A DNA stretch of 64,000 bases, from IMG/VR virus record IMGVR_UViG_3300043399_000272, positions 124,001 to 188,000 of that record, one strand, 5' to 3'. Made by a program: the position numbers and the translations under genes. Below are positions 3-58,073 of the stretch, piece after piece. The notes below the pieces were generated by a model that was not told the origin of the DNA, ran no database searches, and saw nothing but the letters and a program-made list of their open reading frames with translations. Within the stretch, counting starts at the first letter, position 1. Each line of letters starts with the position of its first letter.

Positions 3-3000
3 ACTAACAATTACGCAAATGTGCCATTTGCTAAATCAGGAGGAATGATAACAGAAACATTTGGAACAAGTGTTGCGTATATTCCTGACTTTGGATATCT
101 AGTAGGTGATAGTGCTGCTGGAAAAGTTTATGTGTTTGTACAGGCTGATAACGGAAGTTTCTTCTTAAAAGATACTATGTCATATCCTGGTACTACATTT
201 GGCACAGTAATTGCATACAGTGAACAATTGGTTGTAATTACTGCACCGGGTCCAGCCCTAGGGATCAGTCAAATTTATATTTACAGAATACCAACTACCA
301 ACAGTATCAATGGTTTGACACTACAACAAGTAATTACATTTGGTGGCACTATAGGTAAGAGTGTAACTATCTCACAAGATAGTAACTTATTGTATTTAGG
401 AAGTGAAGATAACAACCTAGTTGTAATATTCCAATTAGATCGTGTTCCAACTCACACTGGTTCAGGACTTAGTTTAGCGGCGGCTACTCAGGTCAGAAGC
501 AAACAGTTTATATGTTCCGGTAATGTAGGTAACTTAATAACTGAAGGACAGCGTGTAAGTTTCTCAACAGCTTATACTAATTTAGGAGTAACAACTTATT
601 ACCCTATAACTGAATTCATGAATGAATTTAAAGTCTTGGGTAACCAAACAGGATTATTATCCTATGGTGATCAAGTGACGTTTAATACATCTGGAACCGG
701 TAGCACAATTGCATACACAATTGGTTCTTTCTATGTTGATGAAGGTCTAACATTAAATATCACCGGCGCTGCAGGCAATGGCACCTTTGCTGCGGTATCT
801 TATGCAGCACAAGCAGTTGCACCTTTCCAAATAGGAGAGAAAATTATAATCTCCGGTATGACACCGGCAGCGTACAATGGAACTCATACCGTAGTAGCTT
901 GTACTACAACTCAAGTCACCTTTGCATCAACTGCGACTGGACCAATGACAGTTGCAGGCACGGTGTCAGCACCTACAATAACTGTATTCAGTACTATAGA
1001 AAACTTTGCTACAGGAACTAATATTAATGTAGGTAACCCAATTTACAAGATTACTTTTAGCCAAGATGATGTGCATACTGTTGTAACGAGCACCTATAAT
1101 TCGTCTACAAATAAAACTACTTTCTTGTTGCAAGATGAAATTAGTTATTCTACTCCATCTGGATCTAATATCTTTATAGTGTCAGATGCATTTAGTATTG
1201 GTGGTATACTATCATCAGTATTAGCCGCAGAAGACGACAAGTATGGTTTTAGCCTAACTACCAATTACGATGGTAGTAAATTGTTTGTTGGAGCACCGTA
1301 CACTGATTTTAGCGAAAGTCTAACAGATACAGGTGTCGTGTTCGCATATGACAGATTGATCATAAATGTAGAAGTACAGTATGATCAAAAAGAAGGTCAA
1401 CCATTCGTTATTCGTCCTCCATTCACACCTACAGACCAAACTAGAGTACTGTTAAACGGTGTATTGTTACAGAGTAATCAATATATTGTTATATTTGGTG
1501 TAATATTTATTGATGATATTGGAATGGTTGCAGGAGATATCTTAACAGTTAACAGCATTAATTTTGTGCTAACATCACAATTGTTCAGCCAAGACAATTT
1601 AAGTGATTTGCGTCAAGGTGAGTTGTTCGGGTACAGTCTTTCTTCTAACAAGTATGGTAGTGAGTTATTAGTGGGTGTACCGTTCGATGTGTCGAATAAT
1701 ACACAAAAAGAGGGTTCTGTAATACGTTTTACAAATGCAGGAAAGCGTTTTGGAAGAATACAAGGTGTAATAGAATGCAACCTATATGAACCGACTTACT
1801 TATTACTAAACGGTCAGATTGTTAATGCATTCTCTGAAACACCATTGCTAGCTACTATAAGTACAGGTGCAACAACATGTACTATTAGTGCATTAGCAGC
1901 CTCATACTTACCTAACTCAGGTGTTATCTCGTTTACGAATACGTTAACTGGTAGCATACAGTCAATTGCTTATACTAGTGTAAACGCTACAACAGGTGTA
2001 ATAACATTTGCAGTTCCGCTACCAACTAAGAATGGGTCTTCTCAAACATTTACTGCCGGAACAACTACAGTTACATTGCCATTAGGTAACGCAGCAAATG
2101 TTGCGAATGCAATTAACAATACAAATATTGATAATATCAGAGCATTCTCAACTGAAGATAACAGACTACAAATTTTCTTATTAAAGAACAATTTAGGTCA
2201 ATCTAATAACAAATTGAATTTAGGTGTGTTTAATGGTAACTTCTTAACAATGTTAGGTGTTATAGATTATGTTAAGTCACAGGTCATTCAAGACCCACAT
2301 GCACAGACACATACTCAATTTGGTTATTCTGTAAAATTTAACCAAGAAGACTCGTTTGTTGTAGGAGCTCCATCTAGTGATAGATATAATTCCACTACGT
2401 TCGATGAGCAGTATGAGGACACACATAAAAACACTGTCTTTGATAATGACTTAACTATCTTTGAAGATCGTGCATTTAATGCAGGTAGTGTCTACATGTA
2501 TGATTATATTGTTTCATACGATGAGAGTCTCACCAATATCGGAAATTACATTTATGCACAATCATGCAATTACACAACTAATGATTATGGTTCTTTCCCA
2601 TACTATGGACAAGTTGTAGATTACAATGATGGTGTTGTTATGGTCGGCGCCCCACAGTTTAAACCGGGTGTTGAAAATGGACAAACTTGGATATTCGCTA
2701 ATGACTCTATGGAACCAAATTGGCACCCATATAGAGAAAGCGATCCAATCGTTAACACAGAAAAGATTCAAAAAGCACAACTGTATGACAACGTAACTAA
2801 CGAAACTCTTGTCTCTTTAGATTACATTGATCCGTTACAAGGAAAGTTATTAGGAGTAGTAGGAGAAAACTTAGATTTTGTTTCCACGACTGATCCTGCA
2901 AACTACACAGCGGTTGACATAAACAATGGAAGTGCAACTTGGTCATGGGCACAAGTAGGTAAACTATGGTTTGATACAAGCACTACTAAGTTCTTAAATT

Positions 3001-6000
3001 ACCATCAGAACGATGTTACGTATAATAGTGAATATTGGGGTTCTGTATTCCCTGGTAGTACCGTTACTGTCTACACTTGGATCGAAAGTTTAGTATTACC
3101 GGTATTGTATGAGGGACCGGGGACAGTCTATGATTCTGGTAAGTACTCAACTGTTTATGTAACTGATAGCAATGATAACTTAGTTCCTAAATATTACTTC
3201 TGGGTAAGAGGAACTAACCAGTTATTTACTGCTGCTGGCAAAACATTGACTGACTCTATCATTGAACAGTATATTGCTAATCCTAAGAATTCAGGTATTG
3301 CATTCGTTGCTCCACTAAGACCTAATACATATGCTTTCTATAACTCTAAAGAGTATATTAATAATAAAACTACAAACTTCCACTTAGGATACAGTAGTAG
3401 TGACAACGACAATACAGGTCATCAAGAATTCCAACTAATACGCACAAACTTTACTGATGATTTCTTGTATGGGTTTGTAAACACTAGCAAAGGATATGCT
3501 GTACCCACTAGTTTATATGACAAATATATCGATAGCTTCTCAGGCACAGATGAGATGGGTGCACCTGTTCCCGATATCACTTTACCTAAGTTGATGCAAT
3601 CAGGTGTTAGTGTAAGACCTAGACAAAGTTTTTACTATAATAGGCTATTAGCTCTACAAAATTACTTAGAGTATGCTAACAACGTAGTTAAGCAATATCC
3701 CATAAATGAGATGGGAAATATTACTTTCTTGTATGCACAGGGAGAATTCTATAACACACCTAACTATTGGGAAAATATTTATTGGTGGGCAGAAGGATAT
3801 AGTAATACTACGAAGGCAAGGTTCGAAGTACCGATTTATAGTGATCTATTAACACTAACTCCTACAGAGGGATTAATAGTAGGTGTTGCTCAAAATCCGC
3901 AAGGCAAGAGAGAAGTATATGTATATCGTGAGTCTAAGTGGTCTAGAATCGGTCTTGAAGATGGTACTATACAATTCTTAGATTCTTTGTGGGATTACAG
4001 TAGCAATCAAATTGGGTTTGGTGAGAATTTCTTTGACAACACCCCATATGATTCATATCCTTCAGTTGAAACTCGCTATATCATTCGAGCACTTAACGAA
4101 CAAATTTATGTTGGATCCCTACAACAACATAGAAATAATAGTTTAACCTTAATGTTTGAATATATTCAAAGTGAAAGTGTAGAAAACCAAAACTATTTAC
4201 CATGGCTAACAAAAACCAGCTTTGTTGATGTTCATTATACCGTTAGAGAACTCACTGAAAATGAAAAATTCCAGAGAGATAATCAAACTTTATTAGAAGG
4301 ATACATCAATGAACTTAAGCCGTACAGAGTTGTATTAAAAGATTTCTACTTAAAGTATAGTAAGACTGATTTATACGCAGGAGAGATAACAGACTTCGAT
4401 TTACCTGCAGTTTGGAATGACACTATAGGTAGATTTGTTTCACCACAGTTGACATTTAACCAAGATAACGGTCCTTATAAATTTGGCGTAGAGAATAATA
4501 TTTGGAACGAATATCAGTACAGCGATTGGTTCAATAATTACGGTACTATATTCTCAGAAATTAGTAACACGTTAGTTACCGAATTATCTGAATTTATTAG
4601 TAGCACACAAACTTACTTGTATGTTAAAAACTCTAATAGTTTACCGGTAACTGGTGTTATAAGAATAGGTGAAGAAAAAATTTCTTACGGTGGTATTTCT
4701 CAACTTGAAGGTAAACTAACTGGATTAATAAGAGGGTTTGATGATACAGTGTCCAGCTCACATACTGCTAATGCGTCGGTATATATGGATGTTCCTGCAG
4801 TTGTAGTACTTGATGCTGGTAGAGACTATGCTAGTACACCTAACGTCATTGCTTATGTTGATTTGAGTAAATATCCTCCACCAAAGAGAGAAGCTAGATT
4901 GCAAGCTGTTATGGCAGTAGACAAAGTAGCTTCAATAACTGTTGTAGATCCAGGTGAAGGTTACGTAACTACCCCATCTATTGTTATAGAATCAAGTGTG
5001 GAATATACTTCTACCAAAGACGCTATCAACTTTGTTTCTAATTTGGTTCAAGTAGAAACTACTGATCTTGCTACCGGTGAGTTAGTATATGTTTCTAGCA
5101 GTGCAGATAATGGAAGTAAGAAAATTATACCTGATGGATATTACTATATTAATGTAATTGAAATTTCATTGCTATCAGTAACAGGTACGTCCTTAGTCAG
5201 TTTCTATACCACTTTAGCAGATAGTATTAAGGGTATAAATCGAGTAGACTTTACAAACTCTGAATATATAAGTAATTCCTATACTATCACGGTGGGAATT
5301 CGAGCAAGAGCTAGAGCCACAATGGATAGCTTACAAGTTCGCTCATTAAAGCCAACTCTACGATTCGATAGAACTAGCTATCGTCCTATGATAACTCCAT
5401 GGACACCTAACGAGTATTATTCTAGTCAATATATTAGTTATGGTAATGATGCTAGTTCCCCAATCAAATTGTATGACAGTTTGGTTTATGAAAATGTATC
5501 GGGAACGGTTTCCCCTGCAGGCGGAACAGGTGCTACATTTACTGTATATGTAGTAGTTACTGGTGTCGAGTACAACGTTTCAGTAGAAGACTTGGGACAA
5601 GATTATGATATAGGTGACGTAATCACTATCTTAGGAACTTCTTTGGGCGGAACTACTTCAAATAATTGCATTATTACAGTAGATGCAGTTGACGGTGACG
5701 GTGGTATAACTGATGTAAGTGTATCCGGCACACCATTCATCTCAACTGAAGGGATTTACATTAATCCTAGTTATGCAAGTTTACAAGGTGCATTGTTACC
5801 AGTAACTGATTTGTCTAGTGTTGATGGTTCTGCAGTGGTTACAGTTGATTTAAACTACAGCGGATTAAAGCCAGGCCAAATTAATAATACTTATATGTAT
5901 TTCTTCACTGAGCCAACTGAAGCTAACCAAGGTATTTATGTTTACGATGATAGTTTATCAGGCGGTGCTGTGATTAGAATCAGTCGTCCTAAATTTAACC

Positions 6001-9000
6001 CTTCTGACCTCAGTAATCTATATGAAATATTGATCGAAGATGCTGGCTTAGGATACGCTGAGGGCAATGAAATTAGAATATCCGGAAGTTTATTAGGTGG
6101 ACAGAATGGTATTAACGATGCGATTATTGTTATTACCAAAGTAAACCCTGATACTTCTATTTTCTCAGCAACTATTTCAGGCACTGCGAATGGTGATTTT
6201 GGACGTTATTATGTAAGAGTAAATTCATACGACTCCGCATTGAACCAGTGTGAAATGTCAATATTCTCTGATCAAAATTTACTAATTCCTGTTTCTTATG
6301 CATCATTCATTTGGAACGGAACTAATACAAGTTACGGATACTTACCAGAACAAATAGTAGACAATTACACATTTAATTATAACGTTGGTTCTGTTGTATC
6401 TTATGCGGGATATGTGTGGAAATGTATCAACGCAAATAATGATAGTGAATTCAACGTCAATAACTGGATAATTATATCCAGTGACAATTACATCTTAAAT
6501 GCGCTTGATAGAATTGAAGCATACTATGAGCCTACTATCAATATGCCAGGAAAAGATCCTCAGCAATTGATGAAGGGTATATCATATCCTAATAACACTT
6601 ATCTAGGTAATAAGTTTGCTCCTGAAGATGAAATCCCATTAGATTTCATCTTACGAAATAATACGTTCTACCCTAGAACTATTAACATCAAGGGAGTCGT
6701 ATTCAATGGTAATACTGTTGTTGCAGTCGGTGACTCAACCTCTGGAAGCTCTGTATTAATATACGACAATGAAACGTCCTTGTTCTCTAACTATAATATT
6801 TCTGAAGTATCTTTGGGAATAACAGATTTATCATTCTCTAATGGTAGATATGTGTTGACTACAACAAATCAAAATCAATCAGTGTGGATCAGTGATGATG
6901 CAGTTAACTGGTTCACAGTTGGTACATATAGTCCTTATGATTTTATGGATTATGATGAATTACAATATGATTCTTCTGGTTTGGTCGTAGAAAGTTATCC
7001 TAAGAACGGCGCGCTTGCTGCCGATGAATTCTCACTAGTTACAGGAAATCAATCTATTTCTAAATCTACTGATGAAGTAGTTTGGGAAGAAATATTCAAC
7101 ATTCAATCTAACTTAAATCAGATACTAAAAGATATTATCTATGTAGATATTTCAGCATTCACTGGCTACATGGCATTTGGTGTCGGAGAAGAAGTTACAT
7201 CTGGTGCAGGTACTGCTGCACCAGTGATAAGTAGTTGTTCCTTAATTTACACAAGTGATGACACTACTGTTTGGACAAAGCAAACTCCTACACTAAGTAC
7301 ATTGGGTATTTACGGTGCGGTTGCAACTACCACGTCTGTTATAGTAGTGGGAGAATCAGGGTTAATATACTCAACAACAAATATGTCTACATGGACCGCG
7401 GGAGTAATTTCAGGGTCACCCGTGACTACAAATATAAATTCTGTTGCATTTGGTAACGGTGTCTTTGTTGCAGTAGGAGATAAAACAGGTACAAGTTCTA
7501 CTGATCCTGGATTAATATTACGTTCTACTAACGGCACAACTTGGACACAAGTTTCCAGTGTATTCTTTACGAATAACAACCTAAACAAGGTTACTTATGG
7601 TGAAGATGGATACTTCTATGCTGCAGGTGAAAACGCAACAATACTAAGAAGTTTGAATGGGTCAAATTGGGAAAACATGTCTAATATTCAAGTTGACGAT
7701 CCTTACTATATTGTACAAGGTAATGACTTCTTGTTTGGTTACGGCCCTGAAGAATTAGTCCCTGGAATAGTAACAGACACGTTATCTATGTATGTAAGAA
7801 GTGCACCTGGTGCATATTGGGACTTGGATACCGTCACTACTATAAATCCAGATGTTCCGTATTGGTACAAGCACACTGGATTTAACATGCAGACAGTCGT
7901 TGCTAAACCTGACAATGACAATGTTGTTAGTTTTGCAGGTTTAGTAGTAAACCCAATGACATTGAGCGTATTCGTCATAGATGATGAAACTCAATTAGGT
8001 ACTAGAATTTATACTGACCTAAGTTCTAATACACCGGTCACAACCAGTAGTAATCCTATAGGATACTCTATTGACTGGATAACAGAGACAATTACATTGT
8101 CTGGCGCAATTTCTGCCACTGAATCTATCATGATTGAAGTTTATGAAGTTGGTAATGGTCAAGAACTCGTGAGAGCGAATTCTAAGATTTACCCAATGAA
8201 GACAGATGGAAATGGAAAAACTATTATTGTATTTGAACAGTTGTACCAAGAAATCGTAGCAGATCCTGTAGTATTTGTTAATGGTGTAAAATTTGAATAT
8301 GTTACTACATTTACGGATACAAACCAATTTACTGTAACAAACACATCTGAAAACTTCTTGATGTTGCAGTTTAATACCGCGCTCTCATCAGAAACTGACT
8401 ATGTAGTGTATGCAATATTGGCAACAGGTTCTACTCTCAGAAACCGTAATCAAGTATTAAACTATAGTATTCCAGAAACACAAGTTTATGTACCTACAGG
8501 AACTGAGACAACGATTGATTTAGATTTTGATATATCGATCGGCACCAATGAAGACAATGCAATTGTTGAAGTTAATGGTGAACGCCTAATACCAGTCACT
8601 GAATATTCATTTAACACATCAACTAATCAACTTGTTTTAGTAAATTCAGTCACTAGTGACGATATTGTAGCCATTACTACTTACAATGATACTTCTAGAC
8701 AATGGTTAGTAACTGATACCTACACTGGCATTTCAGTGTACCCTATAAGTTATATAGATACTTCATTGGCTGTAGCGACAATTACATTTGAAACTGATCC
8801 AGCATATAGTTCAGGGACAATGGTGTATATTAATGGCACTAACGGAACTGTAGAACTAAATAGAAACGCTTATTATGTAAAACCAGTTGAAGTGGATAGT
8901 GTCTATTATTATGAAATATACACCGATGCTGATTTATACTATCCAGTTACTGGTCACGATATCGGCACGTATACTGGTGGTGGTGTAGCAAGTGAAAGTA

Positions 9001-9878
9001 CATTCTCAGTACCCTACCCAGATGTTCCGTTCGGAATGGATCCAATGACATATACTGAAGGAAGTAGAACATGGATCACTGTAAATAGCAAGAGAATAGA
9101 CCCTTCACTTGTAATTTTTGGTGAGAATAATCAGTTGAGTATAATCAGTGATATTTCTAGCAGTGACCAGGTAGTAATAACTGCTATGGTTACAGGAGCA
9201 AGTCCAAACCCAATGACGTTTGATATTAACATCAATAAGTATTCAACTCCGGTGGCATATAGAACTAACTTGCAAGATGGTTCTTGGTTAACTGAAGAAT
9301 TTACAGGTGAAACGGATTATATGACGTTCTTTAACGTAAGCAACTTAGTAGAATCTATTTCTAAGACACTAACCGTAATTGCAAATGGTACAGAGTTATA
9401 TACATTATTGCAAGTTAATATCAACCAGATTAAGGAAGTTATTGTATATAATAATACTACTCTTACTACACTAAGCAGTAATGATTTCACTTTGAGCTTG
9501 ATTTCAGGCGCAAGTGGGTTGACATTCACAAACGGTGCAGAAGAAGGTGACTCAATAACAGTAACGTTAATATTGGGAGACACTGTAGAAATTAACGGAG
9601 AGCGTATTAGATTCAGTACAATTTCTATTGAAAATAATACTATTTCTGGATTGACTCGCGGTGTTGACGGAACACTAGTAGCTCCGGTTCATCCTCAATA
9701 TGCTATAGGATATGGTATCAACGATGCAAGAAGATTGACGCCTGAGCAATATAGTGTAGTTTGGGAAAGTACAGATATTGTATCTACTTCATATTATGAC
9801 GAGATTCCTAAAACAGATCCATTACAGATCAGTACAACGGAAATTGCTCAGTTTTTACAAAGTAGCGCATCAAATTGA
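3..9878 (+). CDS. Giant virion structural protein (baseplate/tail-associated), 5'-partial
   Basis: The frame is open to the window edge. It has FG-GAP-like repeats (FGYSL..GS.L.VG.P), Asp-box repeats (RSTNGTTW, RSLNGSNW) and a CBM-like YNVGSVVSYAGYVWKC. It is T/S/N-rich and followed by tail genes. Confidence 0.75.
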   Translation, partial: TNNYANVPFAKSGGMITETFGTSVAYIPDFGYLVGDSAAGKVYVFVQADNGSFFLKDTMSYPGTTFGTVIAYSEQLVVITAPGPALGISQIYIYRIPTTNSINGLTLQQVITFGGTIGKSVTISQDSNLLYLGSEDNNLVVIFQLDRVPTHTGSGLSLAAATQVRSKQFICSGNVGNLITEGQRVSFSTAYTNLGVTTYYPITEFMNEFKVLGNQTGLLSYGDQVTFNTSGTGSTIAYTIGSFYVDEGLTLNITGAAGNGTFAAVSYAAQAVAPFQIGEKIIISGMTPAAYNGTHTVVACTTTQVTFASTATGPMTVAGTVSAPTITVFSTIENFATGTNINVGNPIYKITFSQDDVHTVVTSTYNSSTNKTTFLLQDEISYSTPSGSNIFIVSDAFSIGGILSSVLAAEDDKYGFSLTTNYDGSKLFVGAPYTDFSESLTDTGVVFAYDRLIINVEVQYDQKEGQPFVIRPPFTPTDQTRVLLNGVLLQSNQYIVIFGVIFIDDIGMVAGDILTVNSINFVLTSQLFSQDNLSDLRQGELFGYSLSSNKYGSELLVGVPFDVSNNTQKEGSVIRFTNAGKRFGRIQGVIECNLYEPTYLLLNGQIVNAFSETPLLATISTGATTCTISALAASYLPNSGVISFTNTLTGSIQSIAYTSVNATTGVITFAVPLPTKNGSSQTFTAGTTTVTLPLGNAANVANAINNTNIDNIRAFSTEDNRLQIFLLKNNLGQSNNKLNLGVFNGNFLTMLGVIDYVKSQVIQDPHAQTHTQFGYSVKFNQEDSFVVGAPSSDRYNSTTFDEQYEDTHKNTVFDNDLTIFEDRAFNAGSVYMYDYIVSYDESLTNIGNYIYAQSCNYTTNDYGSFPYYGQVVDYNDGVVMVGAPQFKPGVENGQTWIFANDSMEPNWHPYRESDPIVNTEKIQKAQLYDNVTNETLVSLDYIDPLQGKLLGVVGENLDFVSTTDPANYTAVDINNGSATWSWAQVGKLWFDTSTTKFLNYHQNDVTYNSEYWGSVFPGSTVTVYTWIESLVLPVLYEGPGTVYDSGKYSTVYVTDSNDNLVPKYYFWVRGTNQLFTAAGKTLTDSIIEQYIANPKNSGIAFVAPLRPNTYAFYNSKEYINNKTTNFHLGYSSSDNDNTGHQEFQLIRTNFTDDFLYGFVNTSKGYAVPTSLYDKYIDSFSGTDEMGAPVPDITLPKLMQSGVSVRPRQSFYYNRLLALQNYLEYANNVVKQYPINEMGNITFLYAQGEFYNTPNYWENIYWWAEGYSNTTKARFEVPIYSDLLTLTPTEGLIVGVAQNPQGKREVYVYRESKWSRIGLEDGTIQFLDSLWDYSSNQIGFGENFFDNTPYDSYPSVETRYIIRALNEQIYVGSLQQHRNNSLTLMFEYIQSESVENQNYLPWLTKTSFVDVHYTVRELTENEKFQRDNQTLLEGYINELKPYRVVLKDFYLKYSKTDLYAGEITDFDLPAVWNDTIGRFVSPQLTFNQDNGPYKFGVENNIWNEYQYSDWFNNYGTIFSEISNTLVTELSEFISSTQTYLYVKNSNSLPVTGVIRIGEEKISYGGISQLEGKLTGLIRGFDDTVSSSHTANASVYMDVPAVVVLDAGRDYASTPNVIAYVDLSKYPPPKREARLQAVMAVDKVASITVVDPGEGYVTTPSIVIESSVEYTSTKDAINFVSNLVQVETTDLATGELVYVSSSADNGSKKIIPDGYYYINVIEISLLSVTGTSLVSFYTTLADSIKGINRVDFTNSEYISNSYTITVGIRARARATMDSLQVRSLKPTLRFDRTSYRPMITPWTPNEYYSSQYISYGNDASSPIKLYDSLVYENVSGTVSPAGGTGATFTVYVVVTGVEYNVSVEDLGQDYDIGDVITILGTSLGGTTSNNCIITVDAVDGDGGITDVSVSGTPFISTEGIYINPSYASLQGALLPVTDLSSVDGSAVVTVDLNYSGLKPGQINNTYMYFFTEPTEANQGIYVYDDSLSGGAVIRISRPKFNPSDLSNLYEILIEDAGLGYAEGNEIRISGSLLGGQNGINDAIIVITKVNPDTSIFSATISGTANGDFGRYYVRVNSYDSALNQCEMSIFSDQNLLIPVSYASFIWNGTNTSYGYLPEQIVDNYTFNYNVGSVVSYAGYVWKCINANNDSEFNVNNWIIISSDNYILNALDRIEAYYEPTINMPGKDPQQLMKGISYPNNTYLGNKFAPEDEIPLDFILRNNTFYPRTINIKGVVFNGNTVVAVGDSTSGSSVLIYDNETSLFSNYNISEVSLGITDLSFSNGRYVLTTTNQNQSVWISDDAVNWFTVGTYSPYDFMDYDELQYDSSGLVVESYPKNGALAADEFSLVTGNQSISKSTDEVVWEEIFNIQSNLNQILKDIIYVDISAFTGYMAFGVGEEVTSGAGTAAPVISSCSLIYTSDDTTVWTKQTPTLSTLGIYGAVATTTSVIVVGESGLIYSTTNMSTWTAGVISGSPVTTNINSVAFGNGVFVAVGDKTGTSSTDPGLILRSTNGTTWTQVSSVFFTNNNLNKVTYGEDGYFYAAGENATILRSLNGSNWENMSNIQVDDPYYIVQGNDFLFGYGPEELVPGIVTDTLSMYVRSAPGAYWDLDTVTTINPDVPYWYKHTGFNMQTVVAKPDNDNVVSFAGLVVNPMTLSVFVIDDETQLGTRIYTDLSSNTPVTTSSNPIGYSIDWITETITLSGAISATESIMIEVYEVGNGQELVRANSKIYPMKTDGNGKTIIVFEQLYQEIVADPVVFVNGVKFEYVTTFTDTNQFTVTNTSENFLMLQFNTALSSETDYVVYAILATGSTLRNRNQVLNYSIPETQVYVPTGTETTIDLDFDISIGTNEDNAIVEVNGERLIPVTEYSFNTSTNQLVLVNSVTSDDIVAITTYNDTSRQWLVTDTYTGISVYPISYIDTSLAVATITFETDPAYSSGTMVYINGTNGTVELNRNAYYVKPVEVDSVYYYEIYTDADLYYPVTGHDIGTYTGGGVASESTFSVPYPDVPFGMDPMTYTEGSRTWITVNSKRIDPSLVIFGENNQLSIISDISSSDQVVITAMVTGASPNPMTFDININKYSTPVAYRTNLQDGSWLTEEFTGETDYMTFFNVSNLVESISKTLTVIANGTELYTLLQVNINQIKEVIVYNNTTLTTLSSNDFTLSLISGASGLTFTNGAEEGDSITVTLILGDTVEINGERIRFSTISIENNTISGLTRGVDGTLVAPVHPQYAIGYGINDARRLTPEQYSVVWESTDIVSTSYYDEIPKTDPLQISTTEIAQFLQSSASN

Positions 9879-29716: not shown

Positions 29717-30130
29717 ATGCGTATTTCGGAAATTATCACAGAAGAAATAAATCCAGATATCCTCAATCCACATTTCCGTCACGAACAAAAGATTGGGGAT
29801 TACACCTATACTGCAACAACCAGCACCAACTATGGTCTGGAGCTAGTTGTCCAAGCGTTTGATGGTAAAAAGCAAATTGGAAAATGTGACTTTGAGATAA
29901 TTGCTGACGAAAAACCACCTCGGTTGGTCAGCAACGACACCTGGGTGGACGGCCGATACCAAGAGCAAGGTGTTGCTACCACAATGTATGCCTATGCCAA
30001 GATGTTGGGCAACGACATCGTTCCGCACGAAATACAATCGGATGCTGGCAATAGAATGTGGCGTTCTTGGCATCAAGCCAAACAATCAAAGCATATCATG
30101 CCTCGTGGGTATGATCCCTTTAAGAGTTGA
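29717..30130 (+). CDS. GNAT acetyltransferase-like protein
   Basis: TWVDGRYQEQGVATTMY, QSDAG..MW; N-terminus MRISEIITEE. Confidence 0.6.
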   Translation: MRISEIITEEINPDILNPHFRHEQKIGDYTYTATTSTNYGLELVVQAFDGKKQIGKCDFEIIADEKPPRLVSNDTWVDGRYQEQGVATTMYAYAKMLGNDIVPHEIQSDAGNRMWRSWHQAKQSKHIMPRGYDPFKS

Positions 30131-30155
30131 CAACACTCAAAAATAAATATACAAT
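30127..30155 (+). promoter_or_regulatory. sigma70 promoter of the tmRNA
   Basis: TTGACA-17 nt-TACAAT, with TAAATA inside the spacer. Confidence 0.85.
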
Positions 30156-30160
30156 GTGAG

Positions 30161-30476
30161 TTATTGCTGTATGAAGCAAAGAGAAAAGTGTTCTGGACCC
30201 GGGTTCGACTCCCGGCATCTCCACCATAAGCACACTAGTTGGGACAAAACGGTTAGATGTTTCCTCGCAAGACGAACTCTAAGCGCCCATCTAGTTAGTG
30301 TGTTTATGATGGGGATGACTTTGGTTTTCGACAGGGCAAAGAGTAACAGAGTGGACAGCACATCAGCAACGATGTAAAAAGAAGAAAATCTATAACTGCA
30401 AACGCAGCCAATGATGAGGTATTTGCCCTAGCGGCATAATCTCTGGGGGAACTATCCCTTATAACCCAAAATAGTA
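30161..30476 (+). ncRNA. ssrA: Circularly permuted (two-piece) tmRNA
   Basis: The acceptor piece comes first: T-arm CCGGG-TTCGACT-CCCGG and CATCTCC-A-CCA ending at 30226. An intervening segment spans 30227-30310. The coding piece starts GGGGATG at 30311 and pairs with CATCTCC including G3.U70. Tag ORF 30398-30439 reads ANAANDEVFALAA*. Confidence 0.93.
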
Positions 30477-30499
30477 ATAGGGACTCAGTCCCTATTTTT
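30476..30499 (+). terminator. Intrinsic terminator after the tmRNA
   Basis: AATAGGGAC-TCA-GTCCCTATT followed by a T run. Confidence 0.75.
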
Positions 30500-31118
30500 C
30501 TGGATATTGCCAAGTCCAAGACCCGTCCTCTCTATATAATCTCGTTCTGCCCTTAACCTTAGTAGATAATTTAGCGGCACCTTTTCTAGCATTTTCGGCA
30601 GCCTGAGGATTTGAAAGCCCTTTATTCCAACTACTTACTCTTGGATTTTTAATTACAAGTCTCTTGCCAATATTATTTCTAGCAGTATTTCTTGCGGCAC
30701 AAGATTGACTGCAAAAAGGCTTTTCTCGTAACGGATGATGACAAAATTCTAACTTACTAAAAATCTTTGAACACTCTAAACATAAATATTGCCTACTTTC
30801 TTTTGGTTTAGTTTTTGTTCTTTTATTTTGAACAGAAAGTAATTTTGAATGTTCTAACCTTGCTCTTTCGTAATATCTGTTGGTATAGTTCTTTTTTCTA
30901 CCCATTAGATTTACAGCATGCCATTGGGTTCCTCCGTAGATTTTTGCCAAAAGAATGTGTGCTACATAATGTTCTCTGGCTGTTAAATTAACAAGATTAT
31001 CCGGGTCACCAGTCCCGCCCATAGATTTAGGAATAATATGATGGGCTTCTTTGTATCCCTCTAACAATCTTTCTTTTGCTCTTTCTATTAACAAATTATA
31101 GTGTTTGGTGTAGTTCAT
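30492..31118 (-). CDS. HNH homing endonuclease
   Basis: EAHHIIPKSMGG...NLVNLTAREHYVAHILL; C-terminal Zn finger (CLEC..FCSQSC) and NUMOD-like WNKGL. Confidence 0.9.
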   Translation of the reverse strand: MNYTKHYNLLIERAKERLLEGYKEAHHIIPKSMGGTGDPDNLVNLTAREHYVAHILLAKIYGGTQWHAVNLMGRKKNYTNRYYERARLEHSKLLSVQNKRTKTKPKESRQYLCLECSKIFSKLEFCHHPLREKPFCSQSCAARNTARNNIGKRLVIKNPRVSSWNKGLSNPQAAENARKGAAKLSTKVKGRTRLYREDGSWTWQYPEK

Positions 31119-36204: not shown

Positions 36205-36612
36205 ATGGCAAGTCTAGCTGAATATTTTGAGAAGAACCGTCCTCAACCTTATTTTGAGTTCGGTACACGTGTGTTCGGTAAATGGAATAAGATTCCTTTT
36301 GTTGGCACAGTATACGGGGATGGTATGATCAATGAAGAAGACGGCCCACGCCTAACAATTCATCTAGACTTGCCCATTAAAGTTGATAACACAGTTAAAA
36401 CAATTATAATTGATACGTATGACAAATTTAAGGGTCTAGTAGAATTATCAGACCCGGATGCGCCCGTAGCTGATCGGAAAGCAAGAGCCTCTAAAACTCA
36501 AGGTAGTGGGTTCGACTCCCACCGAGCGCACCAAACAAAACCTAAAGCTAAGGAGAAATCTAAGTCAACTTCTCTATTAGAGAATTTGAAAAAGCTCAGG
36601 GAAAAGAAATAA
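36205..36612 (+). CDS. Hypothetical protein whose C-terminal part overlaps a tRNA gene
   Basis: Globular N-terminus (GTRVFGKWNKIPFVG..IHLDLP); the tail DAPVADRK...HRAHQ is encoded by the tRNA sequence. Confidence 0.65.
   Translation: MASLAEYFEKNRPQPYFEFGTRVFGKWNKIPFVGTVYGDGMINEEDGPRLTIHLDLPIKVDNTVKTIIIDTYDKFKGLVELSDPDAPVADRKARASKTQGSGFDSHRAHQTKPKAKEKSKSTSLLENLKKLREKK
36460..36533 (+). tRNA. tRNA with CUA anticodon (amber suppressor type), imperfect stems, nested in a CDS
   Basis: Acceptor GCGCCCG/CGAGCGC (6/7 pairs) plus A-CCA; T8A9; D-stem GCT/AGC with GG; anticodon loop CT-CTA-AA (CTA at 36491-36493) on AGAGC/ACTCA (3/5 pairs); perfect T-arm GTGGG-TTCGACT-CCCAC. Confidence 0.8.
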
Positions 36613-56525: not shown

Positions 56526-58073
56526 ATGAGTGGAACTCCTGCACTAATCAAAACACCCTATCAAAAGACTAAGTTTAAAAGTGATAAGGAACTTGAAGAT
56601 TTTATAAAATGCTGTGACCCTAACACGGGTCCAATGTATTTTATGGATAACTTTTTTATGATTCAGCACCCTACTAAAGGTAGTATGAATTATCATCCAT
56701 GGGACTATCAAAAAAGACTAATCGAGACATATCACAAATATAGATATTCTATTAGTTTAATGCCTCGACAAACTGGTAAGTCAACATCGGCTGCTGGATA
56801 CTTGTTATGGTATGCAATGTTCGTTCCAGACAGTACTATTCTTATAGCAGCACACAAATATACAGGTGCACAAGAAATTATGCAGCGTATTCGTTATGCA
56901 TACGAAGCCTGCCCCGATCACATCAAAGCAGGTGTCACTACATACAACAAAGGGTCGTTAGATTTTGAAAACGGGTCTCGCATTGTATCAGCGACTACGA
57001 CTGAAAATACAGGTCGTGGTATGTCTATTACACTTTTATACCTAGACGAATTTGCGTTCGTTCGACCTACAATTGCTTCTGAATTCTGGACATCTATCAC
57101 ACCAACACTGGCAACTGGTGGTAAAGCAATTATCACAAGTACGCCCAACTCCGACGAAGATCAATTTGCACTGATTTGGAAGCAAGCTAACAAATGTGAA
57201 GACTCGTACGGTAACAAAACAGAATTAGGTATAAACGGTTTCAAAGCATATCGTTCATATTGGCAAGAGCACCCTGATAGAGATGATCAATGGGCTGCTC
57301 AAATGAAAGCGCAATTAGGCGAAGACAGATTCAGACGAGAAATAGGTTGTGAATTTATTATTGCAGACGAAACTCTAATCGCCCCCACAACACTATTAGA
57401 TTTAGAAGGTATAGAACCTATACATCGTCAAGGTCAAATCAGGTGGTATAAAAAGCCCGAAAAAGGAAATATATATGTTGTTGCACTAGACCCCGCTGTA
57501 GGTACAGGCGGAGATAATGCAGCTATTCAAGTGTATGAAGCTAACACCACAACACAAGTGGGTGAATGGAAGCACAATAAAACCGACATACCTTCACAAA
57601 TACGATTGATTGCTGACATAAACAAATACATTGTAGAATGTACTAATGAGCCTGATAACATATATTATTCTGTAGAAGTCAACGGTGTCGGTGAGGCCGC
57701 GCTCGTTAGCTTAAATGAATTCGGGTATCACAATATTCCTGGTATATTTTTAAGTGAACCTGGAAGGAAGAAACGCGGATTTAATACTACTAACAAGAGT
57801 AAACTTACAGCATGTGCTAAGTTCAAAACTTTAGTAGAAAGCAGAAAGATGACCATAAACAGCAGAAGTTTAGTGTCAGAATTGAAAAACTTCATAGCTA
57901 TGGGCGGTAGCTATCAAGCTAAAATCGGAGAATCAGATGATTTAGTTACTTCTACTTTACTAGTTGTTAGGATATTTCAGCAGTTAAGTGATTTTAACTA
58001 CGCTTTAGATCAACATATACGTGACCATGACGAGATAATAGAACCCTTGCCGTTCTTCGCAGTTCTCGGGTAA
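56526..58073 (+). CDS. terL: Terminase large subunit (T4 gp17-like)
   Basis: PRQTGKST, RG.S..LLYLDEFAFV, ITSTPN, F.RE..CEF, ALDPA.G.GGD, DDLV. Confidence 0.95.
   Translation: MSGTPALIKTPYQKTKFKSDKELEDFIKCCDPNTGPMYFMDNFFMIQHPTKGSMNYHPWDYQKRLIETYHKYRYSISLMPRQTGKSTSAAGYLLWYAMFVPDSTILIAAHKYTGAQEIMQRIRYAYEACPDHIKAGVTTYNKGSLDFENGSRIVSATTTENTGRGMSITLLYLDEFAFVRPTIASEFWTSITPTLATGGKAIITSTPNSDEDQFALIWKQANKCEDSYGNKTELGINGFKAYRSYWQEHPDRDDQWAAQMKAQLGEDRFRREIGCEFIIADETLIAPTTLLDLEGIEPIHRQGQIRWYKKPEKGNIYVVALDPAVGTGGDNAAIQVYEANTTTQVGEWKHNKTDIPSQIRLIADINKYIVECTNEPDNIYYSVEVNGVGEAALVSLNEFGYHNIPGIFLSEPGRKKRGFNTTNKSKLTACAKFKTLVESRKMTINSRSLVSELKNFIAMGGSYQAKIGESDDLVTSTLLVVRIFQQLSDFNYALDQHIRDHDEIIEPLPFFAVLG

What the first reader, a model, noticed from the sequence alone, without database searches (positions are those of the whole stretch)
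30127..30499. Phage-encoded circularly permuted (two-piece) tmRNA with an extended tag
Seen: a consensus sigma70 promoter, then the 3' acceptor half (T-arm, CCA at 30226), an 84-nt self-pairing intervening segment, and the 5' half (GGGGATG, G3.U70 alanine identity). The tag reads ANAANDEVFALAA*, followed by a probable pseudoknot (30445-30475) and a terminator. Inter-piece pairing is visible: TGTTCTG/CAGGGCA and TTGCTG/CAGCAA. Known: permuted tmRNAs occur in Alphaproteobacteria, some marine cyanobacteria and some Betaproteobacteria. The tag has an extra ANA before ANDE, giving two possible resume codons. Inference: the phage supplies its own ribosome rescue, possibly against host RNase-toxin or anti-tRNA defences.
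Basis: partly seen in the sequence, partly recalled or inferred. Interest (0 to 1): 0.72.

Follow-up and report, generated by a model that had tools for sequence, protein, structure and literature searches.

The report
Phage two-piece tmRNA gene, extended tag
A large uncultivated freshwater phage carries an intact, circularly permuted (two-piece) tmRNA gene, a ribosome-rescue RNA; it is real, but it is a new member of an already described class of phage tmRNAs and differs mainly by three extra tag codons seen only in a clade of related phages.

Summary
ARAGORN calls a permuted tmRNA at 30134-30530 with the tag ANAANDEVFALAA*. Rfam gives tmRNA_permuted at 119.8 bits (cut-off 47) and beta_tmRNA at 99 bits (cut-off 84).

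The host record is a 260-kb viral contig with a large terminase, virion proteins, UvsX, SSB and 46 tRNAs. The true partner of that leader is ACAGCA at 30355-30360.

The nine extra tag bases occur in 23 other viral contigs and in none of 185,579 bacterial species genomes. An invariant UAA at -5..-3 marks the first GCA (30398) as the resume codon. Neither this phage nor 16 other tmRNA-bearing phage records encode SmpB, so the RNA would need the host's.

Phage two-piece tmRNAs are already published, and some are annotated in isolates. I call this a new member of a known kind. Function during infection is untested. The same phage lineage also carries a GGQ-only release-factor-like protein and a conserved tRNA(CUA).

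The parts
30127..30155 (+). Sigma70-type promoter: TTGACA (30127-32), 17-nt spacer, TACAAT (30150-55). The expected transcription start is near 30161-63.
   Evidence: 11 of 12 matches, the best in the region. The 5' columns of Rfam beta_tmRNA align here. About 28 of 95 relatives have a site with at least 10 of 12 matches in the same place.
30162..30226 (+). Acceptor piece, the 3' half of the tRNA-like domain: distal-helix strand 30165-70, P2 strand 30189-95, T-arm 30199-203/30211-15, acceptor 3' strand 30216-22, discriminator A 30223, encoded CCA 30224-26.
   Evidence: All helices are 85-100% paired with compensatory changes in 74 distinct phage sequences.
30227..30310 (+). 84-nt intervening segment, presumably excised during processing. 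A 17-bp closing stem (30227-43 with 30290-306) is followed by UGAU (30307-10) directly before G1.
   Evidence: MFE -26.1, z -3.3; the closing stem has a median of 9 contiguous bp in 74 relatives against 3 in mismatched controls, and UGAU precedes G1 in 57 of 74; segment lengths run 24-203 nt with a median of 86.
30311..30397 (+). 5' part of the coding piece: acceptor 5' strand GGGGAUG 30311-17 (G3 = 30313), D-loop-like GGUUUUCGA 30323-31, P2 strand 30332-38, distal-helix strand 30355-60, hairpin CAUC/GAUG 30361-64/30371-74, A-rich linker, and resume context U30393 A30394 A30395 C U.
   Evidence: G3.U70 is present in 74 of 74 sequences, and UAA at -5..-3 is invariant.
30398..30439 (+). Tag reading frame GCA AAC GCA GCC AAU GAU GAG GUA UUU GCC CUA GCG GCA UAA, reading ANAANDEVFALAA*. 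It is 9 nt (ANA) longer than the canonical ANDExFALAA.
   Evidence: ARAGORN; comparison with canonical and extended relatives.
30445..30475 (+). H-type pseudoknot downstream of the tag: S1 is GGGGG 30445-49 with CCCUU 30456-60; S2 is ACUAU 30451-55 with AUAGU 30471-75.
   Evidence: 98.7% paired against 43-58% for slid controls, 3 pairs with changes on both sides, and 0 of 500 shuffles reach the covariation score.
30478..30500 (+). Intrinsic terminator hairpin AUAGGGAC-UCA-GUCCCUAU followed by a U run. It also reads as a terminator on the minus strand for the convergent HNH gene.
   Evidence: hairpin in the MFE fold; scored on the minus strand; aligned to the terminal hairpin of RF01850.
30492..31118 (-). 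Free-standing HNH homing-endonuclease gene, convergent with the tmRNA gene and abutting it. It has no counterpart next to the tmRNA genes in the held flanks of 120 related viral contigs.
   Evidence: phrog_655, E 2e-43; Pfam HNH; no blastx hit in the 120 viral loci of the first tag scan.

Best explanation
This is an intact, selectively maintained two-piece tmRNA (ssrA) gene of the betaproteobacterial structural type, resident in a jumbo-phage genome.

Inferred mechanism: host RNA polymerase transcribes one precursor from the sigma70-type promoter. The 84-nt hairpin between the CCA and G1 is then removed, by RNase P at G1 and a 3' endonuclease or trimming at the CCA. This leaves an acceptor piece of about 65 nt and a coding piece of about 190 nt, held together by the acceptor stem, P2 and the distal helix.

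Host AlaRS would charge the RNA through G3.U70 and discriminator A73. Host SmpB and EF-Tu would deliver it to stalled ribosomes. Translation would resume at GCA 30398 and append (A)ANAANDEVFALAA, a ClpXP-type degradation tag.

The likely benefit to the phage is to keep ribosomes free while host mRNA is being degraded and host ssrA is no longer made.

Shown here: the gene anatomy, its structural conservation and its residence in a phage. Inferred: processing, charging, SmpB use, the resume site and the benefit to the phage.
For: Detection: ARAGORN; Rfam RF04321 at 119.8 bits and RF01850 at 99 bits.

Structure: covariation supports the acceptor stem, T-arm, P2 and distal helix in 74 phage sequences, with G3.U70 in 74 of 74. 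The pseudoknot covaries and so does the spacer's closing stem. The precursor fold has z -4.97.

Phage residence: TerL, virion proteins, UvsX and SSB, 46 tRNAs, and an identical copy in a second IMG/VR contig, L182.

Selection on the tag: 14 distinct DNA versions of the extended tag differ mostly by synonymous changes in codons 4-13.

Resume site: UAA at -5..-3 is invariant. This agrees with the published -6..+1 determinant (PMC3985003).

Canonical bacterial beta-type tags (ANDERFALAA, ANDENFALAA) share the FALAA end.

A sigma70 promoter placing a phage tmRNA gene in early transcription was also proposed for phage Melnitz (PMC9004378).
Against: There is no expression or processing evidence. The only 'RNA' runs holding parts of the region are probably DNA and mostly hold other organisms' T-arms.

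No SmpB was found in this contig (74% complete) or in 16 other tmRNA-bearing phage records, so function depends on an unknown host's SmpB.

The RF01850 score of 99 bits is low compared with bacteria (160-296 bits). The middle helix of the model is mismatched in the window.

No clear PK1 exists upstream of the tag, only a 4-bp hairpin.

The three extra codons show no synonymous variation. Their translation therefore rests on the upstream-context rule, not on codon evidence.
Confidence: 0.8

Rival explanations
1. The RNA is a decoy or competitor. It sequesters host SmpB, EF-Tu or AlaRS, or replaces the host tag with a longer one, in order to alter host trans-translation rather than simply boost rescue.
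For: No phage SmpB was found. [quoted passage not shown] The extended tag is confined to phages: 24 viral contigs against 0 of 185,579 bacterial species genomes.
Against: The tag frame, the resume context and the FALAA degradation end are all conserved, with synonymous variation. A pure decoy would not need them. The extension keeps an A directly before ANDE, so the AANDE..F motif survives.
Confidence: 0.08
2. The tmRNA is one part of a termination and rescue toolkit of this phage lineage. The conserved tRNA(CUA) reads through UAG stops, which are rare in the phage (12 of 208). Ribosomes then reach mRNA 3' ends, and the tmRNA, perhaps together with the GGQ-only release-factor-like protein, rescues them and marks the extended proteins for degradation.
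For: tRNA(CUA) lies at 36460-36533. Homologues that keep the CUA anticodon occur in three other phage contigs, two of them in the extended-tag clade. There is no in-frame TAG recoding in the genome. A GGQ protein lies in the tRNA array. It is found in 8 of 17 extended-tag contigs and in 0 of 18 canonical-tag phage records. Suppressor tRNAs are known to raise tmRNA tagging (Ueda 2002, as cited in PMC3985003).
Against: The co-occurrence may simply reflect shared ancestry of related phages. Most tmRNA-bearing phages lack both extra genes. The window's tRNA(CUA) has mismatches in its acceptor and anticodon stems. Its amino-acid identity is unknown.
Confidence: 0.1
3. The gene is a passenger: a recently captured host ssrA, a remnant of an integration site, or host DNA misjoined in the assembly, with no role for the phage.
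For: tmRNA genes are common integration sites and fragments of them occur in prophages (PMC9004378). The record is a metagenomic assembly.
Against: The gene is complete, with its own promoter and terminator. No integrase was found. It lies about 26 kb from TerL among phage genes. An identical copy sits in a second contig. Related phages keep the gene near the same PstS, AhpC and CMD neighbours. Sampled bacterial beta-type tmRNAs align only over the T-arm and acceptor region, whereas phage relatives are 70-94% identical.
Confidence: 0.02

Closest known systems
Betaproteobacterial two-piece tmRNA (Rfam RF01850; Sharkady and Williams 2004, cited from PMC3985003 and PMC11915505)
   Same: Same gene order: promoter, acceptor piece with CCA, spacer, coding piece. 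The T-arm, G3.U70, P2 and distal helix match. The tag core ANDExFALAA, one pseudoknot after the tag and the terminal hairpin also match. The model aligns end to end (1-331).
   Different: The score is 99 bits against 160-296 bits in sampled bacteria. The middle helix is mismatched. The spacer is 84 nt where the model consensus has about 30. There are nine extra tag bases. The gene sits in a phage, and no sampled bacterial sequence aligns outside the tRNA-like domain.
Two-piece tmRNAs of isolated phages: OM43 phage Melnitz and 53 others (PMC9004378); Stenotrophomonas Menderavirus phages such as Marzo, annotated as tmRNA
   Same: These are also complete permuted ssrA genes in lytic myophage genomes with no SmpB reported. 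An early, sigma70-type promoter was proposed for Melnitz. The Marzo gene also scores as beta_tmRNA (94.6 bits).
   Different: Melnitz's gene is of the alphaproteobacterial type and carries a glutamine riboswitch; none is found here. Marzo's tag is VAANDDSYTVRIAA and its gene lies inside a tRNA cluster. Here the gene sits among auxiliary metabolic genes, 130 kb from the tRNA array.
Caulobacter crescentus two-piece tmRNA (Keiler et al. 2000, as cited in PMC3985003)
   Same: The same permuted architecture, and the only one for which processing into two pieces and tagging activity were shown experimentally.
   Different: It belongs to the alphaproteobacterial lineage, is chromosomal and has a different tag. 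Nothing has been shown experimentally for the phage gene.
Mycobacteriophage tmRNAs (cluster C1 one-piece; DS6A CDS-less form, PMC11915505)
   Same: They are also phage-borne ssrA genes that accompany large tRNA sets.
   Different: They are one-piece or lack a tag. DS6A's form acts as an inhibitor. The window's gene has a full tag frame.

Membership tests
tmRNA (SsrA), permuted / two-piece form | tRNA-like domain: a 7-bp acceptor stem with G3.U70, discriminator A, a 3' CCA and a T-arm with a UUCGA-type loop | tested here: met
   G3.U70 is present in 74 of 74 related sequences, and the acceptor stem and T-arm covary.
tmRNA (SsrA), permuted / two-piece form | Circular permutation: the 3' acceptor half lies upstream of the 5' half and tag region, separated by an intervening segment | tested here: met
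   CCA at 30224-26, spacer at 30227-30310, G1 at 30311. ARAGORN reports it as 'tmRNA*'.
tmRNA (SsrA), permuted / two-piece form | Covariance-model score above the curated threshold | tested here: met
   RF04321 scores 119.8 bits against a threshold of 47. RF01850 scores 99 bits against 84. Both match over the full model length.
tmRNA (SsrA), permuted / two-piece form | A tag reading frame with an alanine resume codon in the conserved upstream context, ending in a hydrophobic ALAA-type tail and a stop | tested here: met
   GCA at 30398 is preceded by UAACU, and the frame ends ...FALAA-UAA.
tmRNA (SsrA), permuted / two-piece form | Pseudoknots flanking the tag (PK1 upstream, PK2 downstream; PMC3985003) | tested here: inconclusive
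   The downstream pseudoknot is supported by covariation. Upstream there is only the hairpin at 30361-74, as in the Rfam beta model. I found no second stem.
tmRNA (SsrA), permuted / two-piece form | Processing into two RNAs, charging with alanine, SmpB binding and tagging activity | not testable with these tools
   No usable RNA data. The phage is uncultivated.
tmRNA-SmpB system | A dedicated SmpB partner encoded in the same genome | tested here: not met
   PF01668 is absent from the contig and from 16 other tmRNA-bearing phage records, 9 of them at least 90% complete. A host SmpB must be assumed.
ArfB/YaeJ-type rescue factor (considered for the 128-aa GGQ protein at genome 19834-20220, outside the window) | A GGQ peptidyl-tRNA hydrolase domain plus a basic C-terminal tail; a match to the family model | tested here: inconclusive
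   The GGQ motif and RF-1 domain are present (50.3 bits). NCBIfam hits are only sub-threshold matches to RF1, RF2 and PrfH. The C-terminus is not conspicuously basic. I do not file it as ArfB.

The most novel reading that the evidence does not exclude
The nine-base tag extension marks a tmRNA lineage that lives only in phages: 24 viral contigs and no bacterial species genome. In these jumbo phages it travels with a GGQ-only release-factor-like protein and a conserved amber-suppressor-type tRNA. Together they could form a phage toolkit that rewrites what happens at UAG stops and at non-stop mRNA ends, for instance readthrough of host genes coupled to tagging and degradation.
Probability: 0.12. 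Interest if true: 0.6.

Novelty: new member of a known kind. Interest (0 to 1): 0.3.

Why it matters
Phage-borne tmRNAs are catalogued, but their role in infection has never been shown. This locus adds a clean, complete example with a host-type promoter.

It also shows that beta-type two-piece tmRNA genes are common and structurally conserved in large freshwater phages. More than 120 IMG/VR contigs carry one, including complete genomes of 99-365 kb, and none of the 16 large phage records searched encodes SmpB.

The phage-only extended tag gives a handle for mass spectrometry, because tagging by the phage RNA could be told apart from tagging by the host RNA. The find does not change current understanding. 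Because the phage is uncultivated, it is not directly testable yet.

Tried and rejected
- **Expression and processing.** One read-laying run used four runs labelled RNA-Seq. The runs are probably DNA, and the contigs over 30195-30230 are other organisms' T-arms. This gives no evidence either way.
- **Riboswitch, as in phage Melnitz.** None was found at E<=1 in 29900-30700.
- **TAG recoding as the reason for tRNA(CUA).** Rejected. ORF coverage is 90% under code 11. No pair of ORFs of at least 100 aa is split by a single TAG.
- **Genes sought in the contig and not found.** SmpB, integrase, RtcB, CCA-adding enzyme and RNA ligase. The contig is only 74% complete.
- **Host identification.** No bacterial genome has the extended tag. 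ANDE[VIM]FALAA occurs in only 4 MAG contigs, three of them short and in unlikely phyla. Sampled bacterial beta-type tmRNAs align only over the tRNA-like domain. The host is therefore left open; the habitat is freshwater, pond or wastewater.
Rejected in favour of 30165-70 with 30355-60.
- **A small peptide ORF inside the spacer.** Some relatives have one; the window does not.
- **General linkage of tmRNA with tRNA(CUA) or the GGQ protein.** Not supported outside the extended-tag clade.
- **Unavailable resources.** Sharkady and Williams 2004 (PMC516066) is not held. The supplements of PMC11915505 and PMC9004378 hold no matching tags.

Full report
**1. What the record is**

The window is bases 124001-188000 of a single 260,148-bp IMG/VR viral contig. 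It is linear, with a CheckV completeness of about 74% and 37.8% G+C.
- It encodes a large terminase (window 56526-58073). The best matches, at 50% identity, are PA5oct-like Pseudomonas jumbo phages.
- It also encodes virion proteins, a UvsX-like recombinase, SSB, PstS, a carbamoyltransferase and radical-SAM enzymes.
- The genome carries 46 tRNA genes in one array at 8.6-24.6 kb.
- K-mer searches place the phage in freshwater, pond, aquaculture and wastewater metagenomes.
- A second IMG/VR contig (L182, 147.6 kb) is 100% identical across the tmRNA region and its neighbours. The locus is therefore not an artefact of one assembly.

**2. The observation**

ARAGORN reports a permuted tmRNA at 30134-30530 with the tag ANAANDEVFALAA*. 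Rfam reports tmRNA_permuted (RF04321) at 119.8 bits, E 8e-23, and beta_tmRNA (RF01850) at 99 bits against a gathering score of 84, E 7e-29. Both match end to end. Reading the sequence gives this layout:

| Element | Coordinates |
|---|---|
| Promoter TTGACA, 17 nt, TACAAT (11 of 12) | 30127-32 / 30150-55 |
| Distal-helix 5' strand UGCUGU | 30165-70 |
| P2 5' strand UGUUCUG | 30189-95 |
| T-arm | 30199-203 / 30211-15 |
| Acceptor 3' strand CAUCUCC | 30216-22 |
| Discriminator A | 30223 |
| CCA | 30224-26 |
| 84-nt spacer | 30227-30310 |
| Acceptor 5' strand GGGGAUG | 30311-17 |
| D-loop-like GGUUUUCGA | 30323-31 |
| P2 3' strand CAGGGCA | 30332-38 |
| Distal-helix 3' strand ACAGCA | 30355-60 |
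| Hairpin | 30361-74 |
| Resume context UAACU | 30393-97 |
| Tag | 30398-30436 |
| Stop UAA | 30437-39 |
| Pseudoknot | 30445-75 |
| Terminator | 30478-30500 |

The spacer folds to -26.1 kcal/mol (z -3.3). The whole precursor folds to -109 kcal/mol (z -4.97) and recovers the T-arm, the acceptor stem and the spacer hairpin.

**3. Relatives and covariation**

ARAGORN calls nearly all of them permuted.

Many are internal to large phage genomes. These include records of 99-365 kb that IMG/VR or CheckV rate 100% complete, three of them with direct terminal repeats. Their neighbours are phage genes such as PhoH, ribonucleotide reductase, a PD-(D/E)XK nuclease and a cell-wall hydrolase. Several close relatives of this phage keep the tmRNA gene next to the same PstS, AhpC and CMD genes. 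All those tested score as beta_tmRNA at 95-155 bits.

I aligned the acceptor and coding pieces of 74 distinct sequences.
- Every helix of the tRNA-like domain and both inter-piece helices are 85-100% paired, with compensatory changes.
- G3.U70 is invariant.
- The distal helix joins 30165-70 to 30355-60.

The spacer varies from 24 to 203 nt, with a median of 86. Its closing stem starts directly after the CCA and ends four bases (UGAU in 57 of 74) before G1. That stem is kept by covariation, with a median of 9 contiguous pairs against 3 in mismatched controls. The post-tag pseudoknot is 98.7% paired in 15 relatives against 43-58% for slid controls. It has three pairs with changes on both sides, and no shuffle out of 500 reaches the covariation score.

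**4. The extended tag**

Compared with the nearest canonical relative (L080...UAUAAAC GCA AAC GAC GAA...), the window has nine extra bases...UAUAACU GCA AAC GCA GCC AAU GAU GAG....

A full scan finds the pattern A-x-A-A-N-D-E-x-FALAA in 23 viral contigs besides the window. It finds the pattern in none of the representative genomes of 185,579 bacterial and archaeal species. The tags read ANAANDEVFALAA in most contigs, ANAANDEIFALAA in two and ATAANDEIFALAA in one.

Among 14 distinct DNA versions, codons 4-13 vary almost only synonymously. This is partly imposed by the search pattern. Codons 1-3 do not vary at all except for one N-to-T change.

The resume codon can be inferred from context. In 58 of 58 canonical relatives A-4 and A-3 are invariant, and U-5 is present in 54. 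In all 24 extended sequences the same UAA lies before the first GCA, whereas the fourth codon is preceded by AACGCA. This agrees with the published dependence of frame setting on positions -6 to +1 (PMC3985003). The extension keeps an alanine in front of ANDE, so the AANDE..F motif is preserved.

The window's gene also looks mosaic. Its 5' two-thirds are closest to canonical-tag genes (L080: 94% and 82%). Its tag and 3' domain are closest to the extended-tag clade (76-83% and 56-64%).

**5. How it probably works**

The anatomy is that of a working two-piece tmRNA. It has a host-type promoter, a processable precursor, alanine identity elements, an SmpB-binding D-loop-like region, a tag with a ClpXP-type end, one pseudoknot and a terminator.

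No SmpB is encoded in this contig or in 16 other tmRNA-bearing phage records, nine of them at least 90% complete. The RNA must therefore use the host's SmpB, AlaRS, EF-Tu and proteases. The sampled bacterial beta-type tags share the FALAA end, which fits degradation by host machinery.

The most economical reading is that the phage tops up ribosome-rescue capacity early in infection. All steps after transcription are inferred. I could obtain no RNA evidence.

**6.

The contig shows no RtcB, RNA ligase or CCA-adding enzyme. There is therefore no visible RNA-repair module to pair with an anti-tRNA-defence story, although the 46 tRNAs are compatible with one.

Two other items do touch on termination and rescue.
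- **A GGQ protein.** A 128-aa protein consisting only of a GGQ (RF-1) domain lies in the tRNA array at genome 19834-20220. It occurs in 8 of 17 extended-tag contigs and in none of 18 canonical-tag phage records.
- **A tRNA(CUA).** A tRNA with anticodon CUA lies at window 36460-36533 (54 bits). Homologues in three other phage contigs keep the CUA anticodon.

The genome is not TAG-recoded, and TAG ends only 12 of 208 long ORFs. Suppressor tRNAs are known to increase tmRNA tagging (Ueda 2002, via PMC3985003). A combined readthrough-and-tagging role is therefore conceivable. The co-occurrence may equally be shared ancestry.

**7. Comparison with what is known, and novelty**

Permuted tmRNAs are established in Alphaproteobacteria, Betaproteobacteria and Cyanobacteria, and the merged Rfam model dates from 2025 (PMC11915505).

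Phage-borne copies are also established. Buchholz et al. found 53 two-piece forms among 133 distinct phage tmRNAs and described Melnitz's gene in detail (PMC9004378). The tmRNA database lists 79 phage sequences (PMC11915505). Stenotrophomonas Menderavirus phages carry an annotated permuted, beta-type gene.

The window's gene meets every sequence-level criterion of the family. It is a new member, from an uncultivated jumbo-phage lineage, with a modest phage-specific tag variant.

Noticed in passing
window 36460-36533 (+): A tRNA with anticodon CUA (amber-suppressor type; Rfam tRNA 54.3 bits, encoded CCA). It lies inside ORF 36205-36612, whose homologues elsewhere align only over about 72-76 aa, roughly its part upstream of the tRNA. 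Homologues in three other phage contigs (77-84% identical) keep CUA and have cleaner stems. The window's copy has one mismatch each in the acceptor and anticodon stems. The genome shows no TAG recoding.
   Followed up: partly
genome G000:C1:19834-20220 (-), outside the window (L191:1411-1797): A 128-aa protein that is only a GGQ (RF-1) peptidyl-tRNA-hydrolase domain, embedded in the 46-tRNA array. It occurs in 8 of 17 extended-tag phage contigs and in 0 of 18 canonical-tag phage records. It is not a clear ArfB or PrfH by NCBIfam.
   Followed up: partly
related loci: L063, L088, L060, L048, L015/L091 (spacer between the CCA and G1 of their tmRNA genes): In 6 of 79 relatives the tmRNA spacer holds an AAGGAG-type ribosome-binding site plus a 21-29-aa hydrophobic ORF (for example MNDDLTNVGIGVVVVLVVFALVLL). 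The ORF ends at the TGA of the conserved UUAUGAU just before G1. It could be a real small membrane peptide or a by-product of the T-rich stem strand. The window's spacer has no such ORF.
   Followed up: partly
window 30492-31118 (-): A free-standing HNH homing-endonuclease gene convergent with the tmRNA gene and sharing its terminator hairpin. No homologue turned up in the held flanks of 120 viral contigs that carry a canonical or extended ANDExFALAA tag, which suggests a recent insertion beside a conserved RNA gene.
   Followed up: partly
window 30161-30500 compared with L080, L088, L063, L082 and L008: The tmRNA gene looks recombinant. The acceptor piece and the 5' part of the coding piece are closest to canonical-tag phage genes (94% and 82% to L080). 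The tag and the 3' pseudoknot domain are closest to the extended-tag clade.
   Followed up: partly
window 3-9878 (+): One open reading frame of more than 3,290 aa runs off the window's start. It was not examined.
   Followed up: no
L122, L123 and L125 (short contigs in MAGs labelled Rubritalea, Flavobacteriales and Flavobacteriaceae): Beta-type permuted tmRNA genes with the tag coding sequence ANDE[VIM]FALAA sit on 1-7-kb contigs binned into non-proteobacterial MAGs. These are probably phage or foreign contigs that were mis-binned.
   Followed up: no
window 30156-30377 (+): A 73-aa ORF overlaps the tmRNA gene and gives blastx hits to the same region of related contigs, purely because the RNA is conserved. 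Gene callers may annotate it as a hypothetical protein.
   Followed up: no
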